Below are positions 5,903 through 53,000 of a stretch of 64,000 bases of DNA, in pieces (position 1 is the first letter of the stretch; each line of letters opens with the position of its first letter). The stretch spans positions 16,244,001 to 16,308,000 of the forward strand of contig CP075493.1 of the NCBI GenBank assembly GCA_021613535.1, written 5' to 3'. Position numbers and translations under genes: made by a program. Under the pieces are notes generated by a model. The model worked only from the letters and a program-made list of their open reading frames with translations, was not told the DNA's origin and ran no database searches. The DNA comes from Adineta vaga. Taxonomy: Eukaryota > Animalia > Rotifera.

Positions 5903-6853
5903 ATCGTAGTTATAAAAGAAAAAAGATAAGAACGAGCGACGATAATTGTTATGTTATGTTAAAGTTTCACAACAATGATCAAGATTTTAAAAAAACTGCA
6001 TACATTCTCTCGGCATACTATTTTATCTTGCGATAATGATTTTTTCAAAATCATAACTTCTTTGAAAGAAACATTATCAATAATCTTTCAACACAATCAC
6101 CGATGGTTTTCTAAACAACATTAATAATACAATTCTCTTGTATATCATCAAACATCGTTTTATTGACAATAATAAAATCATCATTAACAATGGATTCGTC
6201 CTTGATTTGTTAATTTAACCAATTACAACGTATACCGTTTGAAAGACATGACAATGTTTTCATTATTACCAGTTTCTCATTGAACCTGTGAAAGATGAAG
6301 ACAACTTTTGGTCTACAGTTCAAGATCTCCAGCACACTGAAACATTAGTTTCTGAGTCTTTAAGATAGCAATCTACTATAAGTTTGAAAGCATCTTGAGA
6401 ATGTATGTACGAGTGAAATAGTCTAATCATTACACCCGTAACCTTATTCATAGTACGTCGACATCCATCTGAGAAATTCCTTTTTGACTTTCGACTTTTA
6501 GCCCAACGGCAAGCAAAACACTCTTTTATTTCATATGACTCTCCTTTTAGTCGAAAGAACAAGAGAAAAGAATTGAAACAAAGATTACATTGATAGGAAT
6601 ATCTCGTTTTATTGAACAATCTATTCAAAATAGTTGACAAGCAAGCCAGACCAAACAATTACACAATAAGCTCTTTGAAAACTCTTATCATTGTTGTTTA
6701 ATTGGCAAAAGCTAACAAGCAAATCAATTAAATTAAAACTGTACACATGGAAAAGCGATGAGAGAAGGTCAAAAAAGACAAGATTATCGTAAAGCGCGGA
6801 AAACGATAATATAGACAATAGAAAAAAGAACTTGATGAATCTCAGTCAAAGTA

Positions 6854-9800
6854 TTACAATTCCTGTGGATTATTAAAATTAACAGAGCCGGCGCCTATGC
6901 TTACGATCGAAAATGATCCTACTACATTTTGCTGGTATGTTGTGATAACCAGAATATACTTTATGGCAGTCTGAAGAAGAACTGTGAACATAAACTGTTT
7001 ACTACCACCGCTATTATCATCTGCTGCAAATCGATTTAAGCTTGGAGATGTGGAATTGAATGTATTATTGTATATGTATCCATATGTATCCAAAGTGCTA
7101 GAACTTAAAAACATATATGTTCCATTTGTAGAAATGTTAAGTTGAATGGCTTGATAAAAGTATGTTGATGTTGGGCAAGTATCTCTATGGCAAAACCACG
7201 GACTATTCATAGTTAAAGCTGATGAATAGATTGATTCCACTTTGAATGAATTAGCTAGTTACATAAAATGAAATAAAAGGTAATTATTACAAAGTCAGAA
7301 ACAAAAATATCAAATTTTTTTAAGATTCTGTCACTTAAAATGAAAAACTCTAAGAACAATTGCAAGTAATAACAATAGTGTTCATATTAAATAAATAGAA
7401 ATGATCATATCTGAGCTGGATCTCAAACAATAGCATTTGGATTTCGAGGAATCAGAAAATATTAAATTCATTATCGTACCCAAAGCATATGAAAACATAA
7501 CTTAAATTAATTAAAAGACTCTAAAAACGATCAAAAATATCTTCAAACCCATCTGAACTGTTGAAAATTCTATCAACTTTGCGGCTTGAGCACTTACTTG
7601 TTGTATTAACTTGAACAAAACTAATCATACTTTCACCAAATCCAGAAACCGAGAACACTCCTGTTATTTGCCAGTAGAGTGTTGTTACAACTAAAATATA
7701 CTTGGTCTTAGCTTGAAGAACAATTTTCAACATGAATTGGCTATTCCCACCAGAGTTATCATCCGATAACAGTAGATTTCGATCTGTATCTGCAGTATTA
7801 AAAGTGCTATTGTATATGTAGCCAAATGTATCCATGTTACTATTGCAGAGAATAATATAACTTCCTGTCGTTGATATACTGATTTCGATGGCTTGATAAT
7901 AAAAGGTTGGTGACGCAGCACCCGGCCGAGTAAATAACTGACTATATATCGTCAAAGATGATAAATAATTCGACTGGAACATTGAATTGCCTATTGAGAA
8001 AAAACAAAATCTTTACTTTTGATAGCTTAATTATAGAAAAAGTTTAAGGACAGAATTTAGATTTTGAGGATTTTTTTATGCGACTAAAAGTAATACTTGA
8101 ATGCAAACGGAAAACTGTTCAATTGGTATTGGCGATGATTGTAAAAAATATTTTATATTGAAAAATCTATCACCCTTCGTACAACTACAAAAGATCCTTT
8201 TTCGATAAGTATTCTGTTTAAACAAAAAAAAAGATTCTCTTGTATCTTGGAGGACATGGTATCTTGAATTTGACTTAATATAATGCTTACCTGGTGAAAA
8301 ACTGATTGAATCAGGACCGTGTCCAATGAGTGAAAAACTTTGTGTAACGATTTGTTCATATGTTGTTACAACTAAAATATATTTCATCATAGCTTGAAGA
8401 ACAGTTGCAAGCATGAATTGGCTATTGCCACCAGAGTTATCATTCGATACCAGCAGATTTTGATCTGCATCTACAGCATTGAAGGTATTATTGTATATGT
8501 AGCCATATGTGTCCATGGTACTATTGCACAGTATAAGATAGATTCCTGTTGTTGACACACTGATTTCAATAGCTTGATAATATAATGGTGACATGTAGTT
8601 TTGAGAAAGAAAATAAAATAGAGTATTCATAGTTAAAGCAGATGACCAATCCGATTGAACTCCCATATTTGATGAATTGACTAAGCAGTGGAAAACAAAA
8701 ATATTATTTCCACGAATTTAAATAAAGAAAAATGGCAGATGAAAAATCCCGTTTTTTGTTTTCTGACATGTTTATATTTGTAAGAGTGCTCAGTACCTAT
8801 CGATTTATACGTAATACTCTATTGGATAAGATGAAAGCGAGTACTTATGAAATATAAGAGTTTCAGAAGTAGATACAATATTGATAAAGAAATTTGCTGT
8901 CCGTAATATTAAGAACTGAGTTTAAGTTTAGAACTATCGCTTACATGTTCAGAGGATGTGAGCATCAAACGTTAATTGGTGTGGACATAGGCAAAAGAGA
9001 CACTCAGAAGCTTAAGAAATAACGGCCAAGTATTCTTTATAGACTATGATAGACATTCTGATTGAGAGGAAGGACTGAAAAGGATAATTACACAAGTGAA
9101 ACCATCCTAGAAAACAGCAATATATTATTAATATTCATTTATCTAGGAATGATATAAAATCCAGACTATATCAACGTTGGTCTACTCAATCTCCTTTCCT
9201 CTTATTGACTACGGAGTTTAGATAGTGTTTCATACTGGATCTAGCAGAGCCTACAGAGCATGTATTCAGTTAGTACTCGTTACATTAATTCTGACTCAGC
9301 TAAAGAGAAGCTCACTGTTCTAATGATGATGTTCTATTCCATCGCAGTGTTCAGTTCCCATATTGTCCTAACGTAGGAACTGCCCGTGGTGATTAACGAC
9401 TTTATAATTCATACTTTGAAGACATAGAGGAAGCCTCTAGACTGTAACAAACTTATAGGGATTTGTGCTCACGATCTTTGTTTTCTGAGATATTGAATAC
9501 TCAAGTTATAAAACGGTATAATAATTTTGCCTTATATCACAACTACCGAACAAACGAGAAAATGACAAATGTGAATAGTTTTACGCTAGAATAATCACTC
9601 TAATAGCAAATATGTCTCATCTTTTGAAATTCTTTCCATATCCTTGGCATTCACATAAAAATTTTTATCACAAACGTAAAAACCATACAGACACCAGTTT
9701 GATACGAGAGAGAAAAACGCAAGAGGAGAAAATGTTACTTCAATACTCCAAAAATATTCAGGAGTACGGTGGAGTGTAAATAGAGTATTGGAGTACAGCC

Positions 9801-12234
9801 TTTTCCCCCTTGATCATAAGTAACGACAGGAGACTCTGTCATATCGAAGAATGTCGATTCATATTAATTTATTATAACTCAGCTGTCTTCGTTAATAGAA
9901 TTTGGTTAGTTATATCAACTACAGTCTATGACGCCTTTACTATCTTTGATAGTTAAATCGAGAAGTTGAATTTAAGCATTTAACTGTTCCGTAAAATATT
10001 TCAAATGTTGCGGAGAGTGATGATAACAAGAACTGCGCAAGTACGTTATATGGGTATTTTAGACTAGGGATGCGCAGTTTCAGTAAACCATTTCCATATA
10101 AGTCATTCAATCGTCCACCAGAGTACTAACTACAATGATACCGATGATAACGACTCTGTCAAAACATACACGTTTTGTTAGTTGATTCACAGTCAACAAT
10201 TAAAAAAGAGAAACGAGCATACTCCATGGAAGAGTACGATTTAACTAACAAAAAGTACATATTTTAATAGAGTCGATGTGACAGTTTACCACTATTTGCA
10301 TTGACACTGCACACTCCTAGTTTCAAAGGAAACAGGTATACAACTGAATAGCTGAATTCAACTTTTGAGCTTGACACTATCGTAGCATCACCATTTATCA
10401 TATCTACGGTGACAGAGAAGGACGTAAACTTCTATCCCTAAAACTTCAACACTTCTTTTATTAGTTTATGTTTCATAAAATAACTTTTGTGTCACAATGA
10501 TAAATGTGTATCAAATCGATATATGACTATATCTTCATTCTATCGGACAAGAATTCTCTCATAGTGTCAGTTTGTATTTTATAGCTTTTACTTACTTGTT
10601 GAGAAGTTAATCATTGATGGTCCCAGTCCGTTGATTGAAAACTCTCCTAATGTACTTGGCGTATAGGTCGTTACAAATAAAACATACTTTGTCGTTGCTT
10701 GAAGAACAACTGCGAGTATAAATTGTTTATTACTACCGGCGCCGTCATCGTCAAATGACATTAAATTTTGATTTGGAAATGAAATATTAAAACTGTTGTT
10801 ATATATAAAGCCCTGTGTATCCATGGTGCTGTCGGATGAGATAGTATATATTCCTGCTACCGCTACGTTGATTTTAATAGCTTCATAGAAAAATCCTGCG
10901 GCAAACCAGCGACTTTCAGGACGACTATATGTTGAGCCAGATATTGTCAGAGCAGACGAGTAATTTGATTTCACTGTCAATGAAGTGGCTATTTCAGAAA
11001 AAGAAAATGATGAGGGTGAGGCTGTGAAATAAGGAGAAAGCAGAAGAGACGATTTTTATCGGTTATTGGCAATCTTCTTCACGCCCTTATCCACCCTCTT
11101 GCTCTTAAAGCTGTTTAGTTCCTGCATCAATGAAGGTAAAGTGTTGTGAGATTAAATTTTCTTAAAAATTCTTCCTATCAACTAATCAGATTCCACGAAG
11201 ACGTTTCTCTACTGTTTTCAGCACCAATCATAATTAACGATTACATTAATTCAGAGATTATCTATTATTCTCTTTTTGAACTCTTCGAGCAACTATAAGA
11301 GTATGCATGTTTTGTATTAGTTGTAGTCGGAAAAAGCGTTCAAAATGATCTTCATTTAGAAGTTAGATACATCAAAAGCATTTTCGATAAAAACTTTCGG
11401 AATATGTTCTTTTGACAATGTCTTTAGTGATAACTGATAATATTTTGTTAAGAATATTTTTCGTATTGATCTTGAATAGAGTATTAACTTATTCATTGAA
11501 CATAATACATGTTAGTAAAGCTAACTAGCACGAATACATAATGTGCTATAGTTATATGAATGAACTCAGTTATATGTTATACCTGTACTTGTCGAAGTAA
11601 TAGGAGTCGTATCAATTGCAATGCTGTTTGAGTTACCTGTGAATAAAAAACTATGAAATAAATATCATGTATATTATTCACGTGTAAATAATAGAAGAAT
11701 GCAAGAGTCTTTAAATTGCATAATATTACAGTTACTACAGGCTTTACATTGATGATCTTGTTGGTGTTCTTCAATTAGATAGACATGTGACACAATCTAC
11801 TATATACGACAAATGTGAATGAGGGATGAATATAGCATCAAATGATTAAACTATTAAAAAAGAATATTATTATCAATGTTTTATTGGTTGCAGATGTACA
11901 ATAGCAGATTTTGTCGCAAACGTAACGCATGTAAGGATTTATATATTCGAAGTTTCAAAGAATGTTTTAACAATCTTCGTATTCGCTGAGCCTGATAAAA
12001 TTTCAGAATTCTGCATCAATCTCTCGCATAGTTTTTGACAACTATTGGAATGAATCCTTCTTTCGAAAAGACTTCTTCCTATTTTCGATGTTTTCGAAAA
12101 AATAACTAAGAAGACATACCTGATGATGAAGTTTTTTCTTTGATTTTTTGAGTTACATAAATGAATGAAAAAATCAAGATCACTAACATCAACATTGACA
12201 TTGTTATTTCAATGATAGCTTGGGCTACACGCAT
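6854..12234 (-). CDS. Type II membrane protein: TM, Ser/Thr stalk and four tandem PPC/DVUA0089-like beta domains
   Basis: Six exons with GT-AG and phase-1 junctions: 12234-12120 (TM), 11636-11583 (stalk), 10988-10596, 8680-8291, 7990-7598, 7254-6854. Each of the last four encodes YSS.LT...YYQAI.I....G.Y....S.MDTYGYIYN..F......L..DD.SGG..QF.....LQ...KYILVVTT. Confidence 0.85.
9720..9812. mobile_element. Short foldback MITE (intronic)
   Basis: CAAGAGGAGAAAATGTTACTTCAATACTC pairs imperfectly with GAGTATTGGAGTACAGCCTTTTCCCCCTTG. Confidence 0.5.
10064..10320. mobile_element. Degenerate hAT-like MITE (intronic)
   Basis: CTAGGGATGCGCAGTTTCAGT pairs imperfectly with ATTGACACTGCACACTCCTAG. No clear TSD. 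Confidence 0.35.
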
Positions 12235-13429
12235 CGCGTCAACAAATACTTCGTTTAATACAGTGAGTTATATTTCGTAATGTAGTGTTGAAAATATCTA
12301 TAATGATTTTAAATATGAGACATAAAATGAAAAGCAGAAATATATTCTCATTTGATTATTTATTATCATTCCGAGTTCTTTCCGAAGAACTCATTAATGT
12401 ATAATGAAAATACGGTATTTCTTTTGTATAGATAAATATGAAAAAGAAAAAAGAAAAGACTTCCATAATTTGTCCCATCCGTCTCAGTAAATATCATATC
12501 TCTTGTGCTCTTTTAATAGATTTGTCTTCGGGAGTTCTGTCGCAAAAGATTTCTTAGGAAAATGCATTTCTGATAGAAGGCACACCGTCTAATAAAAAGA
12601 AACCCTTAAAAATCTTTCAAAGGTTTCAAAACATATTACATATTCGTACGTCTTTATTTAGGGTTTAGGAATCCATTATGTCGTTTAGAAGACCTTACAG
12701 AAATGGGACGTAGAATTTATGAAGCTAGCGAACTTTCTTTTATGCTCTATTACTCTAGATTTTTGTTTTACAATTTATATTAATAATTTTTCATGAGCCA
12801 GTATGGTACGTTAGCAAAAGTCTATGTATCAACCGCTTCATGTATATCTCCTTTCGTCCTCTGAGTTTTCTTGATTATCTTAGCCCCCGCTAGACATATC
12901 ATATATGGTGGTTTTTATCACCAAGTGTTTAGGAACTTAGTTGTCTCTCAGGAATTTTCATCAAGAATGGCTGAGACGTTCACATACCACTATTACTTTA
13001 TGTACTCACAGTTTTCATTTTGATCCCTAGGATAAAAGACATGTGTGAGGTCGGGCATTGACAACAAGACATATGCTCTATATCAATAACCTTCGGTTCT
13101 TATTTATATTCACATATTCACGCGTAGAACAGATGAAAAAACTATCAAGCAGTGGCGAGGTGATGTAGATATCAGCGGTTAACATCTACATTAAATCCAA
13201 GTGTCAGTTAGAGGTTTGATTCAAAGGATAGATCGCAGAATGTACCATCCGACTGTAGAGATTTTTGTCAACCACTACAAAAGAAGATTAATTCGTTGAT
13301 GCGAAAGATGATAATGATGGTAATGTTTTAGTATCACTTTCAGCGGCAATGAATTTAACAATTGATAAACTAGACAAATATTTAAAATATTTATTGCATT
13401 TTATTTAGAGCATCATACTTGTTTTCTTG

Positions 13430-13669
13430 AGAGCCCGTCGAGTCCAAAAATTTTGGACAGGGGATCGAATTTAGACCCGAACAAGAACTTCTATTATGCT
13501 CACGCTTGTCTGAGTAGCTGTTCTATTTAAAAAGTCGTAATCGTTCTGTTAATGAATGTTGCTGCTCTCGAATCATTTTCATCGATACTAGCGCATTTCT
13601 TGTATTTGTAAGAACATAGAGCTCCTCGGATCTCACAATTTTGGATCCAATCTAGACTCGACGAGCTCT
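13430..13669. mobile_element. hAT-like MITE
   Basis: TIRs AGAGCCCGTCGAGTC / GACTCGACGAGCTCT; the 8-bp flanks TTTTCTTG / ATTTCCTG match at 6 of 8 positions. Confidence 0.55.
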
Positions 13670-15335: not shown

Positions 15336-17738
15336 AATTATACACGTAAATAGTAAAAAAATACGCTATAAGAAGGAATTTTCTCTAGAAAAATATTTGG
15401 TTTCCCTTGAATTTACCAAATAACAGAAAAATAGGTAAGAAGAAAAAGCTATAATGGCAATGAGATTTATGCTCGATAGTAGCTGGAAAAACAACGTTGT
15501 GCGATATGCAGCTGGTTACTGGCAAGATTTATTTACATCTATCTTTAACTTTAAACAAAAAGCAAGTGGCAAGCGTAACATAAAAGCAATCTCCTTAACG
15601 ACTTAAAAAACAGTAATGAACAGCAATATATTTAGTGCTACGTATTAGAAAAGAAAAGCGGTAGTCAACGCTTATTTTCTCTTGACAAAAAGAGAGAGAA
15701 AGAGAAAAACCATTCTAGAATAGAATGATTGTTATAAGTATCTTTTGGATAGCAGAAACATTTAAAAGAGCAACCTGGTGTTGAAACAATTGTTTGCTTT
15801 TTCTATATACACAATTGGACAACATATTAGACATATACCAAGAATATTAGCTTATATTGCATGGCAATGGATACCTTTTTCCGCATAAGCAAAGTTAGTA
15901 AACCCCCTATAATAGAAGCCCCTGGAAGATTTAAATATGTGGGAGTTTAATAGATCCAAGATTCTCTTGCGAATATCTGCCTAGATACTTGAAATATGGT
16001 TAAGACTTCTGCGAAAAATAGGGAACAACATTCTTCACCAAATAATATCAGTTGAACAGAGGATCATCGATTAAATATGGGGTGTTTCTCCCAATATTGT
16101 TCACTGCTATTCAACTAGCCGTTTGAAACCAAAGATGTGCGGGCGCACATTTCTGGTTCCTCTCCGATCCCGCTTTTCTCGTCAATTTCTCGACGAGAAA
16201 TCAGGAGCGTCACGATCTGACAAAAATAGAAGGGAAGCGGCTGACTACTTTTTTGAAAAGTTCTAAAAATCATCGAAGTTCTTCTGAAAAACTCGAGAAT
16301 TCTCTTAAAACTTTCGTAGCATGTGTCGAGAAAAACAAGGATACTTTTGACTATCAGATTGGAGAGGATGAATGCATTGCTGGACGCAACTCGTTAATCT
16401 TTTTATGGTGATAAAACGTTAGTCGAAATTCAGATTTACGACATTAGTCCTTCAAATGAGTCACAGTCGTTTGAAGCAATAAAATATCGTTCATCTTTGG
16501 TGATTGATATTATTTATCCTTTGACATATGATGACACTGGCTAAACTCAATGTACATTCTACTGTTGAAGAAAAGGCAAGAATGGAAACATTTTTTGTTA
16601 ATTTCGACCATAAAACAGTTTTTAGTTGTTTCCGAAACTATGATAGTTTATCGTTTTCAAAATTCATCAAATCCTTTTATTTTTCTCTATTGAATTAGCA
16701 GCTAAGGTTCATTATAAAGAGCAATAAAAATTTTAAAAAAACAGATAAGAAATCAGCTTCTAACTGATAGAATAAAAGTAATCAATGTAATTATGAACAT
16801 CCTATTACACTGTGTCGTAAGAAACCATCGGTTCTTTCTGACGATCCTGTGTAGTTCCTCAAAAAACCCTTATTTTTATAGAGTGAAACTGTTTGTTTAT
16901 AACATCAGCTGCCTTGAACCGGTCGTGAGTTTAACATACGCGGGTGAGGGTTTGTGTCTGGATAAAAGTAGCATATTTACGGATCAATTCTCTCTCACCG
17001 TATACAAACTTTTTTACGCTATGGGAAAATGATTAACAAATAGTACTGTTTTCTAAATATACTAGTCATTAAACTCCGTCAGAACAAATACACTGAACTA
17101 ATCCTGTTTCACATTTTCAACCCCACAAGCGATTGCGCTAATAGTTGCTTATGTATATTCTATCGTGATTCGCTCGCTTTCTTCGATTCTATCGAGCTCT
17201 GTTCTGGATGGATCCATGGAGAGTTCGATCAACTCTAGAAAATACACTGATTAAAATGGGTGGGTGTTCCCTATTCATCCCATCCTCATACTTTCAAGAT
17301 TGTGGATATGATGGAATGCACAGAACTAGATCAATCTAAGATAAACAAATCCTCACCGATACGCCAGAGATGTCCATCACGGTAGAAAATTGAAACTTGT
17401 CGCACCCCAACCTAGAAAAATGTTGTAAGTTTTACAACTGAGATTGTTTAGAATTAGTAGAATCATGGTTTTACACATCCAAAAGATGAAATTTTGTTCA
17501 AATGCATGCATTTTCGATTGATCCTCCGCAAAAAACCTACCGCTATCGCGAAAGTTATGTAAAAAATTCGAGTACTGTTGCGCCGCACCGCGACGATAAT
17601 ATGAAAAAGGCCATCACTACCACGCCACCATGGAAATCTCTTTGATACACTTAATAGAGTGACATCGTAATGTGTCACAGTAAAATATTGGAAATTTATT
17701 TTTAGATATAAATATAATAAAACAGTTAGAAGAATAAG

Positions 17739-20700
17739 ATGCTTAAATATTATCGAATCCGTCAGTATATACTGGACCAAAATTTCTACAACACAGAAAC
17801 AAATGATGAACATATTAAGAAAAAGGAACGTCTATCAAGTCGGCTTTATTTAATATTACTTATAATCATTTTGTATGCATATGCTTTTTATATAGCATCA
17901 ACTATTCAAATTACTTCCATTTTTGTTGCTAAACCATCTATAGAACAGTATAAAGAGTTGATCAGACAATATCCCAATACATTAAAATGTTCATGTGAAC
18001 GAATTAGTATTTCATATGGAGAATTTCTTAACATTTTACCTGTTTATCATCCAATTTGTTCGTCGGATTTTGTTAGTCAACAATGGATTGATTATTTATT
18101 TTATGAAAATAGTAGTTATTATTTTCAACTTGATTTTCGTCATAGTGCATCAGCTCAATTTCAAATTCTTCGTGCTTTATGCGAACAAGCAGAACTGATT
18201 GTTAATTATAGCCTCACTCAATTTTATTCCAATCAATTCATCACAAATCAACTCATTTCTATGGAAACATTTAATATTCAAACAAACGCATTTATTGATC
18301 TGTTCAAACGAACCACATCACCATTATTTGTCGACATATTGACTTTGACTCGACGAATATTTCTTGAACAGCTCTTCATTTCAGGAATGGGAACATTTTA
18401 TACTGTTAAATGCTGTCGTAACGGTGATCTTACCAATATAATAATAGATGCAATTTTTTATCATGAAACCAATCATAAATACTTCACTTGTATTTGTATT
18501 GATGCATTTGTTTGTAAACTGCCAGAAGGTATTTATACTAATATAATCAAATATGACTATGCTGGATCTGATCCATCGTACGGTAACATGCCGCAATATT
18601 CAAATACTTACAACGTTAATGCTACATTTCTATTACCTGGTATGTTTGTTGGTTGCACTGCTAGTGAATCGTTATTATTTTCAACACCTGAATGTCTATA
18701 TACAGAAACATGTTTAAATCAAATTGGTTCTTATATTAATTATACATCAATATCAGTTCATTCATTTTCTAAATTAAATGAATCTTTATCTACATCACAA
18801 ATAACTTATGAAACATTAATAAATAATTTATTTGTTCAAAACTGGATTATTAATGAATCTTTTAATGATTATTTTCATCAATGTCAACCATTAAATTGTC
18901 AATATATAAATGAAGTAGGACAAAGCTGGACTTCTATTTTGGCTTTAGTTATTAGTTTGTATGGTGGATTAAGTAGTCTTTTACCATTGATCATTCTAAT
19001 TATCATCAATTTTGTTGCTAAGCGACATCAACATCGCTCACCAACAGTTGACGTCATTTCAGTTAACGGTAGGTTTGATTTATATTTAACTGTTCTAATT
19101 ATAAGAAATATCGATTTAATGAATGGTATAACATGGGTAGTCGTGTTCTACACTTTCTTCATTATTTACTTTAAAATACATACATATGATGGATATACGT
19201 GCAGTCAAATGTATTTGCTTATTTTAAATAATAGGAATGAAGAAAGTCCATGCTGTACATTCTAAAACGACGCTGGACTAATCTTTCGTTCACTTTTTCA
19301 AAAAAAGGATTTATCTTACGCAAGGAATAAAACATGTGATAACAAAGTCTAATCTGTGAAAAGCTCTTCAATTACAGTCGAAAAAGTGATGTTCTTCTTT
19401 ATTTTCAATACTAGCGGAGATAGACGATGTTAGCGTACAACCTTCCAGTTTGAGAACTTCATATGTTAGAAAGGCATAGGGGATACAGCGAGGGTCGTGC
19501 TTGAAATTTTTCATCTATCACCACGACATATCCCGTCGTGCATCTTCGATAGAACAACTTATACTATATAGCATTTCAAAACACCCATTTTCTTATAGTC
19601 ATCGCTATGAAATCCATTCCTTGTCTCAGTCATTCCGTTTCAACTCTGTTTTCGGTTCATTTCGGATCCAAAACGCCTTATATTTCAGGTTAAAGTTCCA
19701 TCCATCGCGAACACGATAAGGTACAGTCGTTCCACAAATATTATGTGGAGAGTGAGCAACTTACTTTTGAATTTCTCTCTCTTTCGTTTAACACAACCGG
19801 ATCAGTACGAAAACGTAGTGATAGATGGAAACTCTGAAGATCGATCAAATAAGTTAATCAAAAGTTGGTCAAATTTCAACCACACCCCGTCTCGCATCCT
19901 ATCTCAACTTTTACTTGTACATACGGTAGTGTCATGGACAGTTTGGTAATCTTAGCTATCACATAACCACATGGGTAAAATGTCACCCAGCCACTTTCTG
20001 TCAACGCCGACTGATATCCCCAACCCTCTCTTCAACCTTCATTGGACCTAAGGAAGTGCTATGGAAACTTTCGGAACGTTAGCTATTATAGGGACTCAAT
20101 CCGTAGCGCAGATACAGACAAATCACAACTCGTTGAGATAATCAGTTGATCAAATGACTTCATAGAAGTCCCTCATCTTCTAATTAAAAACCTACCTTAG
20201 AAGAAGCGAGATGATGGATGCGTTAGAAGCTCCCCGAGAGTTTCTGATATGAGAAAAGGGTTCTGTTATGATTGGCAGAATTGAAAATTCGCTAACTCAA
20301 CTACTAAAACAGTTAGGAGCCCTTGAGTGCTGAGTTACTTAATTTTTACAGTTTTCTTCTTAATTCTGTCACAATGAATAATTAACTTACGTCTTTTGAA
20401 GGCTTAACGCTCTTTTACTAATTTTCATTGTATCGCTTTTTCATATTAAATAGTGTCTATGAAAGCTCGTTGGAATCAATTAATAGAACAAATTGTCAAT
20501 TATCTTAAGAAATTAAATATATATCAGAGCAAATCAAATGATGAACATATCAAACAAAATGAAATATTATCAACAAGAGTTGTTTTTATTGCATTACCAA
20601 TTTTGTTAATTATTTTCGGTATATATTTATCATTAGATAAACAAACTAAAATCATAACTATTGATAATCCAACACAAAATCAATATGAACAGCTTGAAAA

Positions 20701-23700
20701 CAATTCAGTTAATAATCTACAATGTCCATGCAGTCACATATCAATTAAATACAATAAATTTATATCTTTTCAACCAAGGTATCATCAAATATGTTCAAGT
20801 ATATTTGTATCTGAATTGTGGCTCGATAATATATATTGGGCAGGTACTGTTTCCACAGTTTATACTGATTTCAGATATCTATCAAGTTCGTTTTTTAAAT
20901 TTTTATCAATATTATGTGAAGCAGCTGGTGAAACTGTAGTTAACAGCTTAATTATCTTCAATGCTAATGATTATTTAACATCAGAAGTTGTTTCACCTGA
21001 TATCTTTAGTAACGAAGTAACTTCATTCATTGAATTATTCATAACTACAACACAAAGATTATTTCAACTTCGCATAAATTTAATTCGATCGCTTATATCT
21101 GGAAATCAACTGATTAATCTGAGAAGTACAAACAGTATGCTCCAACGTTTTGATGGTAATTATGGTGTAGAATATCATGCAGTTATACGTACACTTAGTT
21201 TATGCTCGTGTGCTACTAATCTGTTATGCAAACAACCAATGCGTTTTACTTCTTCTGTTGAGCAATATTATATATTGGGAATATTTCAAGCTTGTTTTGT
21301 TGTCGATACAGTATTATTCTCAACAACAGAATGTTTTTTTAGCGACGATTGCATTAATAGATTGAAGTCTGCTATGATTCCAACAGCGATCATATATAAA
21401 TATTTAAAAACATTGAATACGTCCACATCAAGTCAATATCAAGCAAATACAACAATCGAAATAATTGCTAATAATTTATTTGTTGATGATTGGAATGTAA
21501 TCTCTTCTTACAGTCACTATTATGAGCAATGTCAACCATCTTATTGTTCATATACTATAGAAGAAAAACCAAGTCAAATATATGTATTAACAAAATTATT
21601 TTCTATATATGGAGGTTTAATGGTTCTTATGAAGATGTCTGTATCAATTCTTATTAATTTTATTAGACGAAAACCAGTACAGACAATAGGTAACATTTCT
21701 GTTTTCATTTTCATTTTATTATAGAGATATAAATGTTAGAAGATAGTGGATTATGAGTCAACTAGCTCGAGTTTTACTATTAGAATAGAGATAATAGGCT
21801 ACATGAATGCAGTAAACATTTTGATTGATCCATGAATTTCTCGATCGATCGAGTGTTGGTTATGTGCTTTTTCGATATGCTTGCGTAATACTGTTTCTAT
21901 TTTAATATCAAGATTCAACATGAGAACTGAATAGAACACAATTGTTATCGCTTTCGATTTGTACAAAATCAGGCTCTACAGCTTTACTTGTTTACTACGT
22001 ATAATACATTTTTATAGACTCTTTAAATCAACGAAATAATCTCTAAACATTTTAAAATATGTTAGATCATTGAGTAACCAATCTACAAAAATGATGTGTA
22101 GTTTTTGTATCATAAGAGATAAATCTCTTAATCATCATGAGACACAGCCAGGATCGATCTATCTTTTCGAGTCTCTTTTATGCATAGATGTTCATGATGA
22201 CGCGGTAGGATGTTTTTCGGATCAACCAAAAACTCATGAATTTGAAGAGAATTTTAATGTTTGTAAGTGTAATACCATGAAACTCCATGGATCTCCTCGA
22301 TTACTAGTGGTTCTAAACAATCTCAGTATAAAACTCACAACATTTTCTAGCAATCATCGCAGTAGCGAAAGCGATCAGTTTTCTGCCGCGATAGACATCT
22401 CTGGTTGTATGTTTTATGTCAACATAGAGAAAACTTCTATCAAGTTTAGTCATGTTACAATATAAACTATATTAGGATTCGTACTCTGCCACATGGTATC
22501 TTCACAGACATAAGATATCATAATGATGAGTATTTTTGAATTGAAAAAAACTGAAATCATAATTCACACGAAATGATTAATAGATTGATATTCTTCTTGA
22601 TAAGTATTAAAGTATCACTAATGTCCATTATAATGATACGTTTTCTTCCATAATTACATTATACATAACTTGTCGGTACATATAAGAATCTTTTCTTCTG
22701 AGAATAAAAATCAAAACTTAATTGAAAGAGTAAAACTTATATCTCCAAAATCAAAACTATCTAAAGTCATAAAAACCCAAACACGATACTATAGAAAATC
22801 CTAATTCTACAACTTTTAGGTGAAATTTGACATTGTAATATAGATTAGTCATGTTTGATAGACCGATGGTAATACCCATCACCAAAAATGACCATCTGTT
22901 CTACTTTCTGTAAGCTACTTAAGATATGAACAATGAAGAGTTTATACAATATACTACAACGTAGATATTTATAATAACTTCGTAGTCAAATAAGAAGATG
23001 ATATGAACTATCGTTCAGCATAGATTTTCACTTTTAATTATATACTAATTATTTTTAGCAATACCATTGAGTAATCGAATTAAGCAAATTTTTCCATTAG
23101 CCAAAAAAAATTTATTAGATTTAAATTTATTTCAAACTTCTTCGACAAATAATCAAATTATTAAAGAACAAATTTATTCAAGTCGATTTTATATAATTAG
23201 TTTAATAATTATTTTTCCTATTCTTCTATCATATGTGCTATTAAATAAAAAAACAGTAACTATTACGATAGAATTACATAGTTTAAATCAATATAATAGT
23301 TTACGAATGAAATATCCAACAACAATTACCTGTCCTTGCACGGATATTTCTATACGTTATGATCGATTTATAGAAGTTAATCCATTTTATCATCAAATAT
23401 GTTCATCTGATTTTGTCAATCAACAATGGTTTGACTATTTATATGATGAAACCAAAATTTACGAGAAAAGTTATCATAGTACGGCTTCGGCCCAATTTCA
23501 AATTCTTTCATCATTATGTAAACAAGCACAAGTGGCTGTAAATAATAGTCTTATACAATTTTATTCAACAAAATTAATTAGTGGTCAATTAATACCTTCG
23601 GATTTATTACAAATTCAAGTTAATACAACCGTTAATTCCTTTAAAAAAGCAATGCCACAAACATTTAAACAAGCATTGAATATGATCAGCAGTCTTATTC

Positions 23701-24332
23701 ATGGTAATACATTTATAACATCATATGAATCAAACTGGAAATTCACTGTATTAGGTACTTATTCAGGTGCACCTATTTATACAAATCCTCAATCGTATGG
23801 CAACTCATGTAGTTGTGCCACTTCATTAAAATGCTCACAAGAAGTAATACTTACTGGTAATTTAAATTCAACATTATCTGGTTTGTTTATTGGTTGTTAT
23901 CCACTTGAATCATTATTGCAATCATCATTAGAATGTTTATATAATCAACAATGTTTGAATTTAATAATAGATTCTTTTCAAAATCAAATATCCAATGGTG
24001 ATGATTTTAAAATACTTAACTTATCTTCATTATTAAAAAGTTCCTATCAGAGAAATGAAACGGTTGAACAAATAGTCGATCGATTATTTGTTGACGAATG
24101 GAATAGCAGTCATTCTTACCAAAATTATTATGAACAATGCCATCCGTCGCAATGTACTTACTCATACATTCAAAATTCTGATCTACTTTATATAATAACA
24201 ACAATTGTGGGTTTATATGGTGGGATAACGATTATATTAAAAATTCTCTCAAAAATGATAATTCATTTTGTTTTCTCGGTGAAAAACCGTGAACAGACAG
24301 TGATTGTACCAATTTCACCATCAACTAATTAA
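17739..24332 (+). CDS. Membrane protein of three tandem [TM1 - Cys-rich ectodomain - TM2] modules, ~1279 aa, 6 TM; candidate concatenated DEG/ENaC/P2X-topology channel
   Basis: Three exons (17739-19068, 20454-21689, 23059-24332) joined by phase-1 GT-AG introns, one module per exon. Shared motifs: R(L/V/F).. TM1, C.C..ISI.Y..F....P.YH.ICSS.FV...W, F..L..LC, C.C...C, (G/A)C......L.S..EC....C, LFV..W.....Y..QC.P..C.Y, then TM2 with (L/I)YGG(L/I). The channel function is inferred. Confidence 0.85.
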
Positions 24333-47042: not shown

Positions 47043-50000
47043 TTATTCGATAATATTCAAAAATATCTCATAAAATCCACTGGATTCATTAACATCGATG
47101 ATATCTTCACGCCCATCAGTATTAAAATCTCCGATAGCAATCCAACCATTTCCATTAGTAATTCTTGTTAAAAATGCTATCTGTAATTGAAAATTTCCAT
47201 TCCCATCTCCAATTAATATGTTTACTTGATGAGACGTTCGACCAAAACCGATATCAAGAAAGCCATCGTTATTGAAATCTTTGACAAATAATTTATAGTT
47301 TGATATATCTCCTATATCATATTTCTTATTTTTACCTAAAGTTCCATTACCATAACCAAACATAACGATAATATAATTTCTTTCTTCATAAGAAATAACA
47401 ACATCTGATAGTTTGTCATTATTAAAGTCACCTATAGCAAAACTCTCTGGAGTATGAAGGCCTCCACTGATAGAAGTCTTTTGTTCTTGAAATGTTCCAT
47501 TACCGTATCCCAGAAAGATACCAATATTTTTATCATACTGATTTAAAACAGCAATATCTGGATAATTATCATTATTAAAATCAGTAACGGCAATGCTTAA
47601 TGGATAACTATTTATACCAGTACTATATCTCTCATATTTTGAAAATTTTCCGTCACACGATCCAGAAAATATATTAACGAAATTATTCCTATCACAAAAA
47701 GCAGTAGCAGTTGTCCAAACGATATCTAAGCATGGATCACCATTTAAATCAACTGAAATGACTTCTGTGGTTCCGGAGGATGTGGGTTGGTAAAAACTAT
47801 GTTGAAAACGGCCAAAACCATCTCCGAGTTTTACCGTCAATCCACCAAATTCACGAAAACCAATTAGATCGACTCGATTATCATTGTTAAAATCACCAGC
47901 AATAATTTGTATCAAATCATTATAAAAACCATAGGACATAAATTCTGTTCTAAATGTTCCATTACCATTTCCAAAGTACAAAGACACAATGTCTTTGCCT
48001 TCATTGAGAAAGGCGAGATCCATTCGATTATCACCATTAAAATCAGCAACAACGCGTTCTTTTTTCATATACAAAGGAATTTTCACACTATTTACTGGTT
48101 GAAATTTTAACTGATTTGGTGATTCTTAGAAATGAACAGAAACAAAAAATAATATACTTATTTCTTAAATCAAACTTATTTTGAAGAGATCTGTATCAAT
48201 ACGATATTGGGGTATTAGTATTGGTATTGTTACATCCCTATCCTTAATTTCAGGGACGTATAGTAAGGGGGATCCGTGGAGCGTACTGCCCCTCTGTTTT
48301 GGGAAAATTTTGGCGGTGCCCCCTGCTTAATTTAAAATTGATTAAAAATGAGTAAGGTAGTCGAAGAGTACCGATGATTATGTCAGAATATGTCCAGATA
48401 CTTTCAAAACTAGAAAATTTTTTCGAAAAAAATTAAATACTTTGTATTTTTGTTCATTGAAAAGATGATTGTTAAAAATAGGAATCATTTCTCATGACTT
48501 ACTGTATTGAGTTGTCGTTGTCGTTAATATATTTGTTACTAAAGTTGTATTGAAGCTAGTTGCCATAATTATCGTTGAAGTTGCTAAAGAATTTCAAGAC
48601 ATATATTGAAAGTGATTAAAAATATGAGATTCATATTTCTTTAGATGAATAGTATTTTTTTGAAAGAATTTATATTATTCGACATACTAGTTTATGTATT
48701 TTTAGTTTTCATTGTGATCCAAACCGTCAGTTAGTCGCGAGTCTTTTTCTACATAGTTTTTTCATTTCTAACTGAAGACATAATTTTTAAATCTTAAAAA
48801 TCTATCAGATTTTATAGTCATAATCACACCTCGTGAAATTTTTTTATAAGCGTGTGTTGAAGTCATTGGTACTACTCAGTTTTGTTTAGTTTTCGCGTTT
48901 GAATTTAACTTCGAGATCTTCATAAATCATATTTTAATATATTAGAAAAAGGTCTTTTGATGAAAATTAGCGTTCTGATGATTTTTTCTGAAGAAATGAT
49001 AAAAAATTCGATAAAAAAATGTTCGTCAAACGAAAAGCCGATTGTCAAGAAGCAATGATGATCGAAAACTATGATAGAAAGTCAAAGATATACATGTAGA
49101 TTCTTATTATATAATCGTTTAGTCTTTGTAAATTAAAAGATGAAAAACTAAATAAAAGAAAATCGATAAAATGACGATCCTACTTGTTATTGTTGTCTTG
49201 TTTTTTTGTCGAATAATATAAATAGAAAATATAATTAGATTTGTTATTATTAATAACAATGTTAAACATAAGAAAATTTTCTTAAAAGAACATCGATTCA
49301 ATGTTGTGCTACAGAAGAAACAAAATATATTTTTCATAGCAATGAAATTAAATCAGACGTACTACAATGGCACATTATCATTTGATGTTAATTCTGTATT
49401 TGAAAGAGAAGATAAAATATTTGTATTAGTAGGTATTGTTTCAACTAAACGTATAGGATGAATTGTATTTCTTTTATTCTTTTGATATCGATATATTTTG
49501 AATATATTTTGAATAATTTTCGGACTAATCCATCGAAGAACAATTGATAGACCGGATTGAATACTAAGTAAAATAGTTATTATATAAATTAAATTAAATT
49601 TTTCAATATAAGTATAAGAACATGATAAAGGAGAACATTGTTCATAATAAGATGTATAATTCATTGTTGTATTCCATTGTTCAATAAATAAATTATTAAT
49701 AAATTCATCAATAGTTGTATCAACTGAATATCGACTACTATTTAGTTTTACAAGTGCATCAAGAGAATTTGTTGTTGAATTGGTTTGATTGATTGTATTC
49801 ATATATTGTTGAATAGTATTAATACATGATTGATTATAAAAACATTCAAGTGTTGATAAACGAAAGGATTCACTTGGTAAACATCCTATTTTTAAACCTT
49901 CAATTAAAATAGTTTCCTTTGATGACTTGTTTTTATTAAACATAGCTTGACTTGTACAATTAGAATATAATCCACATGAACAAGTATTATTATTATAAAT

Positions 50001-53000
50001 CACAGGTTCACTAGGTATATAATAACCAGCATGTAGAATCATATATTGAAAATTACTTCCATAAGTTGATATAATAGCATTTCCATGATTGATATTTCGA
50101 ATTAATAAAAGAAGACGCGTAAATGTTGTTGGAGCAGTTGATTGTTTTTGTTGAATTGTTAAATTAAGACGTTTATGAAAATTTGTTTCGGATAAAAGTT
50201 CAGAAGTTGTAAATAATGAAAAACGAAATTGTTGAACAGTAATATTTACTATTTGACTAGAAAGTTGACATAATCCTTGAAGAAATTGTAAATGAGCAGA
50301 AAGGAAACGACGATAATCTTTCTCAGGTAATAAATTAGTTGGAATAGAACCACCTGTCAGTTTACTTCGTCCTTCATTCGAAGTGAATGGACTTGAACAA
50401 ATCTAAAATCAATAAAAAATGAAGCTATATAACTTTAAAGATTTGTTTTTGAATATTTCCAAAAAAGTTAATTTACTGATCCACACTCTTATTCATAGAC
50501 TTTATAAAGTTGTGCATTTATTTTATTATTTTTCCTTACTTGATGAAATTTTGCTTCCGTTTTGACAAATCTTTCGTATGGTGATGCAACTGATGAACAG
50601 ATACATTTTAATTCGTCTCCATATTTTTGATAAAGTTCATTATGTTTATCAAAACCTGGTTTCTCAAATGTTTTTGTGTGTCTTGTAGATTGAACACCAT
50701 TATAAATAGCGAGAATAATGAGACCAATGATAAACAAAATAAGATATAGACGAGTAGCCCATATTCCGAGATGTTTAATTGTTGTTCGATCAATATTATT
50801 ACCAAAATCACGTACATTGAAAATATTCAATTCTTTCAAAATTTTGTATAAAAGTGTGATCAGTTTCTGAACAGTTGCTTTGATTCGAATAAAGCATGAT
50901 AAATGAACTATTTATAATAAAAGAAATTTTATATTTTTTTTAAATACCAATAAACCAATTGTTATGACTCTCATTATATTAGAAAACAACTCGAAGAACA
51001 GCATCTTTTTTGAAACATGGGTAGTGAAATCTAGGAATAAAAGACTGATTTTTCTTTCTCTATAGAGATAGCAAATAAGTGTGCAATGTGTGATTTTTCG
51101 GGTCAAATAAAGTGAGCTGAGGGTGGGTGTGGGTGTGAGTGAAGAAGATGTACCTACACCCACCCACACCCACACCCACACCCACACCCACACCCACACC
51201 CTCACCCTCAAGATGGTACTAAAGAACAAAAGATATTCGTAACTACTCTAATTAAATTCTTAAAACCAAAAACTCTATTGACGATTATTTGTAAATACTG
51301 ATCTTTTTCATCCGTACAACCTTATCAATAGTGAATCATTTTTATTTTATATCAAGAGGGACTTGTTATACTATATAAATAGAACCAAGAATTACTTTGC
51401 TGTTGTTGTTGTTGTTGTTGTTCTTTTTTATTAATCTTTATGGATAAAAAGAAAACAAACTTGACTAGTTGAGGCACAACAAGCCGCAATACGATAATCA
51501 ATCCACCGATCATTGATATAAATTTGATTAAGACTTCACTGAATTTTGGACGAATTTTAATTAAGTAAGTACAACGAGTTGGTGAACATGATTTATAAAA
51601 CAGATCATATGAAAAAGATGAATTCCATTGTTCAATAAAAACATTTTTGATAATTGTTAAGATTGTTGTATTTGGAGGAAAACGACTTATTTCACCCATG
51701 TAAACATTTTTTGAGTTAAAACGCGTTTCAACTGCGTAGCGAACGCGTCTAATTTGAAGCAATTGAGCGCGTTTATGCGCGTCCCTGGTGAAACAATCGA
51801 GGCCCCTAGATGCAACCCAATAACAATTGCGTTTACACGCATCTGCTACAAAACTGCGTCCAGACGCGAACCAAATGAAAGTGCGTTTAGACGCCTCGAT
51901 TGTTTCACCACAGACGCAGCTGTAATCTGTGACGCTGCTAGACGCAGTTACGACATGAACTGTGATAAAAAATAAAACCGCGTCTAGACGCCCCGATCGT
52001 TTCACCAGGGACGCAGCTGTGACCTGAAACGCTACTAGACGCAGTTAAAACTTGAACTGCGCCTAAACGCGAATTCGAAACAGATTGCGTCTAGGTTCAA
52101 CCGAGATGACAGACGCAATCGAATGCAGTTTGTAATAAAAGTGCGTCTAGATGCGTTTGATCAGGTTTTTCAAAATTTGAAAAAATATATCATAATCCGT
52201 CTCAGTTTTGATCTGAGTCGCCATCGATGACCCCTAGCGATGGTCTTTACCTTATTATAGGCCAACGGAATGATGATATATTGATTTATCTAGAATGATA
52301 TGAGAGAGATTTGAACAAGTGAACAAGCGATTTAGAAGCAAGTGTACATACCGTTCAGTCACATGTGACTGCAATCGTTATCATATAGAAGAGAAAGTCT
52401 ATGTGAAATTTGAATCCATTTCTATGTGATTACATCAATTATTCGGATAGTTCTACCGTGAATAATATTTAAGCTATTATTATTCATATTTAAAAAATAA
52501 AAATAAAATAAACTATATTTTTTTTAATTAAAATTTTTTCATTTATCGAAATTATTCTACAGAATGGATATTTTTAGACTTAAATTACATCATTTATTTT
52601 CTAAAATCATTATTTTAACGTTTTTGTATCAAATATTCTTTGTTTTTCATTTTTTTATCCAGTAATATAAGCAATAAAAATTCCTTTTTAATTATTATAC
52701 AAAAACAAAACCAATTGAATTGAAGCATGTATCTGAAAAATTAGCACTAAAAATTCCAGTTATGATCAAAACAAAATTAAATATTTTGATCGAATTAAGA
52801 TCTATCGATCAATATTCGATTTGACCGTTTTCAAAATATGTTTTTGTTATATTGACGACGAGAATATTTTATTTCGTGTATTATTTTGTTATCTAAATTT
52901 AAAATATAAAAAATATTTTCAATTAATATTTCCATCATTACAAACTAATTTATATCTTTTGAATTTCAGCACATAATCTATTTTTATGATTTATAAAGAA

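What the first reader, a model, noticed from the sequence alone, without database searches (positions are those of the whole stretch)
17739..24332. Single-chain pseudo-trimer: exactly three concatenated 2-TM/Cys-rich modules, a candidate new DEG/ENaC/P2X-like channel family
Seen: three phase-1 exons each encode a ~420-aa module with a short N-terminal segment, TM1, a large ectodomain with conserved cysteines, and TM2 carrying YGG(L/I). The distant paralog at 47043-63109 also has exactly three modules. Known: DEG/ENaC/ASIC and P2X channels are trimers of 2-TM subunits with Cys-rich ectodomains. Loose local echoes: KYPTTITCPC versus ENaC FPAVTICN after TM1, C.P..C.Y versus C..PC...Y, and a Gly-rich TM2. 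Inference: the three subunits of a trimeric channel or receptor are fused into one polypeptide, which fixes the stoichiometry. I cannot assign these proteins to a named family.
Basis: partly seen in the sequence, partly recalled or inferred. Interest (0 to 1): 0.9.

Follow-up and report, generated by a model that had tools for sequence, protein, structure and literature searches.

The report
Three-module six-TM rotifer surface protein
This is an intact Adineta vaga gene for a six-transmembrane protein made of three tandem copies of a 2-TM, cysteine-rich module; it belongs to a huge bdelloid-only family with almost always three modules and a fold matching no solved structure, and it is not a relative of ENaC/ASIC or P2X.

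Summary
Window 17739-24332 (+) carries three paralogous ~420-aa modules (about 33% identical) joined by two phase-1 GT..AG introns. The joined product is the public 1279-aa 'hypothetical protein I4U23_005324 [Adineta vaga]'.

Single-chain fusion is proven in paralogs, which have uninterrupted two- and three-module reading frames. The number three is not free: none of the 150 best database proteins exceeds three modules. A. vaga clusters fill to 31 triplets, 17 doublets, 27 singles and none larger (partial sample).

AlphaFold2 gives one module pLDDT 94 (pTM 0.81) and a three-module homolog pTM 0.80, so the modules pack into one body. A three-ectodomain complex test gave only weak support (0.49, best control 0.11).

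The ENaC/ASIC/P2X link fails. There is no Pfam or PDB sequence match, and no Foldseek or VIA fold match beyond the TM hairpin.

The family has roughly 1000-1300 candidate modules per genome and is named only in bdelloids. It evolves fast (dN/dS 0.4-0.6), sits towards chromosome ends, and is often fused to FG-GAP/NHL propellers. I read it as a pseudo-trimeric surface recognition protein. Channel activity is untested, and no RNA evidence was found. First readers noted the same architecture on two other pieces of this genome.

The parts
17739..19068 (+). Exon 1 = module 1 (residues 1-443 plus the first base of codon 444). TM1 is about 17850-17906 and TM2 (LYGGL) about 18936-19007.
   Evidence: ORF and translation; donor G|GTAGGT at 19069; HMM hit E 1.7e-118; identical to P0048 1-443; hydropathy
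19069..20453 (+). Intron 1, phase 1, GT..AG, 1385 bp. It is swollen by an old dispersed repeat at about 19410-20120.
   Evidence: Sequence; over 50 genomic copies at 65-81% identity matching query positions about 330-1040
20454..21689 (+). Exon 2 = module 2 (residues 444-856 plus the first base of codon 857). TM3 is about 20579-20635 and TM4 (IYGGL) about 21599-21661.
   Evidence: HMM hit E 9e-125; hydropathy
21690..23058 (+). Intron 2, phase 1, GT..AG, 1369 bp. Its first ~200 bp and last ~30 bp are homologous to the 353-bp intron at the same position in paralog I4U23_004999; the middle is inserted DNA.
   Evidence: Sequence; matches at C1:15118578-15118784 (78%) and C1:15118477-15118507 (94%)
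23059..24332 (+). Exon 3 = module 3 (residues 857-1279 plus stop). There is no Met before TM5. TM5 is about 23184-23240 and TM6 (LYGGI) about 24180-24278.
   Evidence: HMM hit E 3.6e-143; AF2 model of this module pLDDT 94.3, pTM 0.81

Best explanation
The locus is one intact gene, Adineta vaga I4U23_005324. It has three exons and two phase-1 introns that were enlarged by repeat insertions. It encodes a 1279-aa, six-TM, N-in membrane glycoprotein.

The protein consists of three tandem paralogous modules. Each module runs: short cytosolic amphipathic helix with an LNLF motif, TM1, a ~330-aa ectodomain with 12 conserved cysteines, then TM2 with a GLxGGL motif.

The gene belongs to a bdelloid-restricted, hugely expanded family in which whole three-module genes duplicate and three modules is the ceiling. 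The three modules are predicted to pack into one compact body, which makes a single-chain pseudo-heterotrimer. The ectodomain is an alpha/beta fold with a long helical hairpin and has no detectable relative among solved structures.

Inferred function: a cell-surface recognition protein (sensor, receptor or adhesion). Diversified, indel-rich distal loops would bind external ligands. The conserved membrane-proximal core and six-helix TM bundle would anchor the protein and possibly transmit the signal.

Shown here: gene structure, family, the three-module rule, topology, and absence of known homologs. Inferred: the packing geometry and the function. It is not a member of DEG/ENaC/ASIC or P2X.
For: - Gene model: the phase-1 GT..AG junctions and the lack of a start codon in exon 3. 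The identical public 1279-aa protein.
- Conservation of the whole gene: full-length three-module orthologs and paralogs at 56-73% identity in A. vaga, A. steineri and A. ricciae. Intron 2 is homologous to a paralog's intron.
- Fusion proven: uninterrupted frames of 845, 1260 and 1369 aa spanning modules in paralogs. A 1228-aa three-module protein recurs on many metagenome contigs.
- The rule of three, in proteins: the top 150 of 3702 representatives are ranked by summed score, which favours more modules. They hold at most 3 module-equivalents (76 with 3, 73 with 2, none with 4 or more).
- The rule of three, in the genome: 154 A. vaga modules form 31 triplets, 17 doublets, 27 singles and nothing larger. 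A Rotaria locus annotated as two genes holds exactly three modules.
- Orthologous module positions: 74 of 90 modules have as nearest neighbour the same position in another protein. Position changes on the tree number 19, against about 44 when shuffled.
- Topology: six TMs and the positive-inside rule.
- Fold: single module pLDDT 94.3, pTM 0.81. Three-module homolog pLDDT 86.3, pTM 0.80.
- Ectodomain complex: ipSAE 0.49 against a best control of 0.11, rated weak support.
- No known relatives.
- Recognition role: C-terminal FG-GAP and NHL propellers in 9 of the 10 long members tested. dN/dS is 0.42-0.63. The most variable, indel-rich region is module residues 215-279. 86% of modules lie in the outer quarters of their chromosomes.
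Against: - No transcript evidence. Assembled contigs of four runs guessed to be RNA do not cover the gene.
- I could not inspect model coordinates, so three-fold symmetry and the identity of the central helices are unknown.
- The complex test is only 'weak support'. It used ESMFold2 without alignments and ectodomains without TMs.
- The full-length model is of an A. ricciae homolog about 31% identical to the window's protein, because the window's protein exceeds the 1200-aa limit.
- The ectodomain was never folded and searched on its own, so a remote fold match could have been missed.
- One Didymodactylos locus has only two modules.
- dN/dS near 0.5 is also compatible with relaxed constraint.
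- The functional assignment rests on family-level patterns, not on any assay.
Confidence: 0.6

Rival explanations
1. Functional version of the reader's idea. The protein is a single-chain pseudo-trimeric ligand- or stimulus-gated ion channel. The three TM2 helices line a pore, as in ASIC/ENaC and P2X trimers, but the protein evolved independently of those families.
For: - It has 3 x 2 TMs in one chain with strictly three modules and a compact predicted assembly.
- The cytosolic parts are too short (16-62 aa) to hold a signalling domain, which suits an ionotropic mechanism.
- The TM helices, the pre-TM1 residues (N21, T40) and a TM2 glycine (G387) are among the best-conserved positions.
- The family size resembles that of chemoreceptor families.
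Against: - There is no homology to any channel by sequence or fold.
- No pore could be examined.
- The TM helices lack conserved charged or selectivity-type residues, and GxxGG-like motifs also serve plain helix packing.
- The recurrent fusion to adhesion-type propellers does not require a channel.
Confidence: 0.2
2. Three separate tandem single-module genes, or independently transcribed modules, rather than one spliced gene.
For: - The gaps between modules are about 1.4 kb, which I take from general knowledge to be long for bdelloid introns.
- Module 2 has an in-frame ATG at 20459.
- Database entries of 400-600 aa exist.
- No RNA data settle the question.
Against: - Module 3 has no Met before its first TM, and both junctions are frame-preserving GT..AG.
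- Paralogs have gaps of 50-150 bp, or no gap at all with continuous ORFs.
- The long gaps are explained by repeat insertions into short ancestral introns.
- The linker peptides are conserved in orthologs.
- A Rotaria case annotated as two genes is really three modules.
Confidence: 0.04
3. A passive structural or protective surface glycoprotein, for example a glycocalyx, egg or desiccation-related coat component. It would have no sensing role, and its diversification would be neutral.
For: - It has large disulfide-rich, N-glycosylated ectodomains and minimal cytosolic parts.
- dN/dS is about 0.5.
- The family is restricted to bdelloids.
Against: - The module count is strictly conserved and module positions are orthologous.
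- The conserved TM and juxtamembrane motifs suggest more than an anchor.
- Several hundred diverged paralogs are unusual for a structural role.
Confidence: 0.12
4. This particular copy is a silent or decaying paralog. The family is real but this gene is not functional.
For: - No RNA contigs cover it.
- Both introns carry repeat insertions.
- It sits in a region with transposon insertions.
Against: - It has 1279 codons without a stop or frameshift, with intact splice sites.
- dN/dS is below 1 in all three modules against two paralogs.
- All 12 cysteines per module are kept.
Confidence: 0.04

Closest known systems
DEG/ENaC/ASIC channels (Pfam ASC, PF00858)
   Same: Per-module topology: intracellular ends, two TMs and a large Cys-rich extracellular loop. 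The functional unit contains three such units.
   Different: There is no profile match and no fold match. The ectodomain is built around a long helical hairpin plus beta-sheets. The three units are covalently fused and have diverged to about 33% identity. Conduction is untested.
P2X receptors (PF00864)
   Same: They are trimers of 2-TM subunits with disulfide-rich ectodomains and a conserved pre-TM1 motif.
   Different: There is no sequence or fold match and no ATP-site evidence. This protein is a single chain.
Mitochondrial carrier family (SLC25, PF00153)
   Same: The architectural principle is the same: three tandem 2-TM repeats in one chain give a six-helix, pseudo-three-fold bundle (general knowledge).
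   Different: Carrier repeats are about 100 aa with no ectodomains, sit in the inner mitochondrial membrane and are unrelated in sequence. Here each repeat carries a 330-aa extracellular domain.
Concatenated-subunit channels (four-repeat Nav/Cav, two-repeat TPC and K2P)
   Same: Subunits of an oligomer are fused into one polypeptide, which fixes stoichiometry and lets the repeats diverge (general knowledge).
   Different: These are different folds built on 6-TM or 2P units. The only Foldseek rows to Nav/Cav have E of 0.5 or more and TM-scores near 0.05, which is noise.
Polysaccharide co-polymerases (Wzz, PF02706)
   Same: They have an N- and a C-terminal TM flanking an alpha/beta domain with a long helical hairpin, and they act as oligomers.
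   Different: The match is only TM-score 0.29 over 210 residues, with no Pfam hit. They are bacterial and periplasmic and have no cysteine framework.

Membership tests
DEG/ENaC/ASIC (PF00858) | Sequence-profile match to the ASC family | tested here: not met
   No Pfam family at E<=1 for modules 2 and 3, and only a sub-threshold DUF5866 hit for module 1. The 126-sequence module profile finds no PDB chain at E<=10.
DEG/ENaC/ASIC (PF00858) | Ectodomain fold shared with ASIC1/ENaC structures | tested here: not met
DEG/ENaC/ASIC (PF00858) | Two TMs with cytosolic ends and a large Cys-rich extracellular loop | tested here: met
   Hydropathy, K/R distribution, and Cys and N-glycosylation sequon distribution; AF2 secondary structure.
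DEG/ENaC/ASIC (PF00858) | Three-fold assembly with a TM2-lined pore; amiloride-sensitive cation current | tested here: inconclusive
   A compact three-module model has pTM 0.80. The three-ectodomain complex scored 0.49 against a best control of 0.11, rated weak. Currents are not testable with these tools.
P2X (PF00864) | Profile match and the P2X ectodomain fold | tested here: not met
Unnamed bdelloid three-module 2-TM/Cys-rich family | Each module matches the family profile over its full length and keeps the 12-Cys framework plus the CPC, HQxCSS, ECFYNQxC, CxPxxCxY and GLxGGL motifs | tested here: met
   E 1e-118 to 1e-143 per module; conserved columns.
Unnamed bdelloid three-module 2-TM/Cys-rich family | Three modules per polypeptide | tested here: met
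   P0048 has three stretches.
Mitochondrial carrier (PF00153) | Mito_carr repeat signature | tested here: not met
   No Pfam hit. This is an architectural analogy only.
Wzz / polysaccharide co-polymerase (PF02706) | Pfam Wzz match or a convincing fold match | tested here: not met
   No Pfam hit. The Atlas TM-score is 0.29.

The most novel reading that the evidence does not exclude
The family is a previously unrecognised class of ionotropic surface receptors. Each would be a natural single-chain concatenated 'trimer' of 2-TM subunits with a new ectodomain fold, expanded to several hundred genes as the main chemosensory or non-self-recognition repertoire of bdelloid rotifers.
Probability: 0.15. 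Interest if true: 0.9.

Novelty: categorically new. Interest (0 to 1): 0.63.

Why it matters
By a loose candidate count, roughly 1000-1300 modules may belong to one undescribed membrane-protein family. That is about 340-450 genes and on the order of 1% of the A. vaga genome. The family has a confidently predicted fold with no match among solved structures, and a strictly conserved three-module, six-TM architecture.

If the modules form a pseudo-trimer, this would be a natural example of fixing trimer stoichiometry by gene fusion. Three ectodomains could then diverge within one receptor. As far as I know, that design has not been described for 2-TM/large-ectodomain proteins.

The family is an obvious candidate for how asexual, desiccation-tolerant bdelloids sense chemicals, surfaces, microbes or each other. 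It also offers a tractable target for structure determination and electrophysiology.

Tried and rejected
**Homology searches that found nothing**
- Pfam on the three modules found nothing usable.
- The module profile against PDB sequences gave 0 hits at E<=10.
- Foldseek of the single-module model against PDB and BFVD, and of the three-module model against PDB, gave nothing at E<=0.001.
- VIA-align wide gave only short helical matches of at most 98 aligned residues, none covering the ectodomain.
- The ESM Atlas searches by structure and by features returned only rotifer clusters. The weak Wzz, sCache-like, CSS-motif and ciliate Y80K_N rows had TM-scores of 0.3 or less or a feature score of 0.78, so I rejected them as kin. 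PF27811 is not in the local Pfam copy.

**RNA evidence**
- No listed holder of the stretch is an RNA run.
- Four runs guessed to be RNA were laid on 5,701 bases. They gave only 18-40-base chance matches and no joints. This is uninformative and is not evidence of silence.

**Complex test**
- The three-ectodomain test gave 'weak support'. I report it as such and do not count it as a pass.

**Genome census**
- The plan was to fetch 114 ten-kb stretches.
- I replaced it with three partial top-100 searches, so doublets and singles are probably incomplete triplets.

**Literature**
- No description of the family was found.

**Spliced model**
Exons were searched separately by reference. The joined 1279-aa protein was used only as the database's own record, P0048.

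**Size limit**
- The window's own protein could not be folded whole because the limit is 1200 aa.


Full report
**1. What is in the sequence**

Window 17739-24332 (+) holds three long open frames. Their products align end to end at 33-34% identity with 79 invariant columns, including 12 cysteines per module.

- Exon 1 ends at 19068 (donor G|GTAGGT). An AG at 20452-53 opens exon 2 at 20454.
- Exon 2 ends at 21689 (donor G|GTAACA). An AG at 23057-58 opens exon 3 at 23059.
- Both introns are phase 1, and the split codons read Val and Ala.
- In each downstream exon the frame is closed by a TAA a few codons upstream of the acceptor.
- Module 3 has no methionine before its first TM helix, so it cannot be translated on its own.

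I searched the exons separately by reference and did not join them myself. The exhaustive HMMER search returned a public 1279-aa protein, P0048, with three matched stretches. Its sequence is exactly the three exons joined at these sites. It is NCBI 'hypothetical protein I4U23_005324 [Adineta vaga]' on an 18.1-Mb contig. The window is G000:C1:16244001-16308000 of a 100.8-Mb, six-contig genome.

**2. One gene or three?**

No transcript evidence could be obtained. No listed holder of the stretch is on record as RNA. Laying four runs guessed to be RNA on 5,701 bases gave only chance matches of 18-40 bases. That says nothing either way.

The comparative evidence is strong, however:
- The closest A. 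vaga paralogs are also same-strand triplets with gaps of only 50-430 bp.
- Several paralogs have no gap at all, with uninterrupted frames of 845, 846, 847, 1260 and 1369 aa spanning modules.
- I read the 845-aa frame on C5 directly. TM2 of one module runs through about 16 residues into the 'LINLNLFQ' helix and TM1 of the next.
- A 1228-aa three-module protein recurs on many independent metagenome contigs.
- Full-length three-module proteins at 56-73% identity and 97-100% coverage exist in A. vaga, A. steineri and A. ricciae. Their linker peptides align with those of the window's protein.

The unusual 1.4-kb introns are secondary. Intron 1 contains an old dispersed repeat with more than 50 copies at 65-81% identity. 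Intron 2 shares its first ~200 bp (78%) and last ~30 bp (94%) with the 353-bp intron at the same place in paralog I4U23_004999. The extra DNA lies in between.

**3. Is 'three' a rule?**

In the database, the profile finds 3702 cluster representatives. The 150 best are ranked by summed score, which favours proteins with more modules. Re-cutting them with the module HMM gives 76 with about three module-equivalents, 73 with about two, and none with four or more. The few '4-7 stretch' rows are fragmented hits that sum to three modules or fewer.

In the A. vaga genome the first look finds 1016-1339 candidate module matches, of which only about 100 are scored per search. Merging three searches gives 154 distinct modules. 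On one strand they form 31 triplets, 17 doublets and 27 singles, and no cluster is larger than three even when 6-kb gaps are allowed. Doublets and singles turned into triplets as searches were added. The median gap inside triplets is 205 bp.

Two outside loci were checked:
- A Rotaria locus annotated as two genes holds exactly three tandem modules.
- A Didymodactylos locus holds only two modules on a 16-kb contig. The rule may therefore not be universal across Bdelloidea.

A tree of 90 modules from 30 complete proteins was also built. In it, 74 modules have as nearest neighbour the module at the same position in another protein. The position label changes 19 times on the tree, against about 44 for shuffled labels. 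Whole three-module genes therefore duplicate, and the modules keep position-specific identities. Deep position clades were not resolved.

**4. Topology and structure**

Hydropathy gives six TM segments. The N-terminus, the two inter-module linkers and the tail are K/R-rich (0.12-0.22 per residue) and free of cysteine. The three long loops are K/R-poor and carry all the cysteines and nearly all the N-glycosylation sequons. The protein is therefore N-in with three ectodomains.

AlphaFold2 on module 3 with a 126-sequence alignment gives mean pLDDT 94.3 and pTM 0.81. The elements in order are:
- a cytosolic helix;
- a long TM1 helix;
- a mixed alpha/beta region;
- two helices of 32 and 36 residues forming a hairpin;
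- a beta-sheet region;
- a second alpha/beta region;
- a long TM2 helix.

The window's own protein is too long for the tool (1279 aa against a 1200-aa limit). I therefore folded residues 9-1208 of the 1208-aa three-module A. ricciae homolog P0061, which is about 31% identical, using 54 full-length sequences. The result was mean pLDDT 86.3 and pTM 0.80. A pTM that high for three 400-residue modules implies a confidently defined mutual arrangement rather than beads on a string. I could not obtain coordinates, so a three-fold axis and a TM2-lined pore remain unseen.

A complex test used the three ectodomains of P0048 as separate chains (ESMFold2, no alignments). It scored 0.49, against a best control of 0.11, and the verdict was 'weak support'.
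- The mark was reached by 51 of 78 solved complexes and 2 of 108 mismatched pairs.
- At 0.60 or under it was reached by only 5 of those 78 solved complexes, and by all 4 mismatches that passed.
- The runs agree in at least 88% of their contacts, and the partner's pLDDT is at least 79.

**5. Comparison with known families**

Nothing known matches:
- Pfam gives no hit.
- The family profile finds no PDB chain at E<=10.
- Foldseek finds nothing at E<=0.001 in PDB or BFVD for the module, or in PDB for the three-module model.
- No ASIC, ENaC or P2X chain appears in any of these lists.
- The ESM Atlas returns only rotifer clusters above TM 0.5. The next rows (Wzz 0.29, ciliate Y80K_N 0.27, sCache-like 0.21) are not significant.

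One caveat applies. The ectodomain was not folded and searched alone, as the tool advises before a fold is called new.

The DEG/ENaC/P2X reading therefore fails as a statement of kinship. Per-module topology and a unit of three are shared by analogy only. The nearest architectural analogies are the mitochondrial carriers (three 2-TM repeats in one chain) and the concatenated-subunit channels (Nav/Cav, TPC, K2P). I recall both from general knowledge.

**6. Clues to function**

- All named relatives come from bdelloids: Adineta, Rotaria and Didymodactylos.
- Ten long members of 1700-2240 aa were tested. Nine carry three modules followed by FG-GAP repeats, and one of those also has NHL repeats. 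The window's second locus has the same layout. These propellers are typical extracellular binding domains.
- The module next to the propeller defines a subfamily of at least 58 loci.
- Against two A. vaga paralogs, dN/dS is 0.42-0.63 at dS 0.25-0.39 in all three modules. This is purifying selection, but fast evolution.
- Across the family, the TM helices and membrane-proximal motifs are the most conserved parts. Module residues 215-279 are the most variable and indel-rich.
- On the three chromosomes of known length, 107 of 124 modules lie in the outer quarters.
- The cytosolic parts are too short for a signalling domain, yet they keep near-invariant residues (N21 in LNLF, T40 before TM1).

**7. 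Verdict**

The 'single-chain, exactly three modules' reading is well supported. The compact pseudo-trimer is moderately supported. Kinship with ENaC/ASIC/P2X is rejected.

My best reading (confidence 0.6) is a pseudo-heterotrimeric surface recognition protein from a very large, fast-evolving, bdelloid-specific family with a fold unlike any solved structure. The idea that it gates ions is open (about 0.2) and directly testable.

The gene models are already public as 'hypothetical protein', but I found no description of the family. First readers of this scan noted the same architecture on two other pieces of this genome and at the second locus of this window. Those notes are unchecked and are not independent evidence.

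Noticed in passing
window 19410-20120 (inside intron 1): An old dispersed repeat of about 600-700 bp, with more than 50 copies across all six chromosomes at 65-81% identity. One copy lies just upstream of another family member on C3 (C3:1492869). It was not classified.
   Followed up: partly
window 22202-22404 (intron 2) and 17364-17543 (minus strand, upstream of the gene): A ~200-bp fragment inside intron 2 is repeated in inverted orientation just upstream of exon 1 (68%) and on C5:2506152 (77%). The 131-aa ORF at 22070-22465 inside the intron has no Pfam match.
   Followed up: partly
window 49467-63106 (minus strand) and 47043-48086: A second family gene with about three module-equivalents split by small introns, followed by an FG-GAP propeller ORF (E 4e-43). 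The middle module appears interrupted by about 8 kb that carries a plus-strand 350-aa transposase-like ORF at 57135-58187 (DUF1258 5e-14, Transposase_21 7e-5).
   Followed up: partly
G000, for example C1:16556011, C2:15671571, C3:3608061: The module adjacent to the FG-GAP propeller defines a distinct subfamily. At least 58 loci are 44-68% identical to it, one per locus. This suggests dozens of propeller-fused three-module genes.
   Followed up: no
L032 (Rotaria sp. Silwood2, CAJNUA010001298.1) 6968-13443: Three tandem modules on one strand are annotated as two genes of 444 and 594 aa. Public gene models probably split this family often, so single- and two-module database entries are unreliable.
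   Followed up: partly
L031 (Didymodactylos carnosus, CAJNOK010002939.1) 5985-11064: Only two tandem modules sit on a 16-kb contig, annotated as separate genes of 441 and 534 aa. No third module appears even at permissive thresholds. This is a possible exception to the three-module rule in another bdelloid genus.
   Followed up: partly
P0199 and P0201 (A. steineri orthologs), alignment A5 around P0048 residues 833-858: Both gene models lack most of TM4 and the following linker. This would break the membrane topology, so it is probably a mis-predicted intron rather than biology.
   Followed up: no
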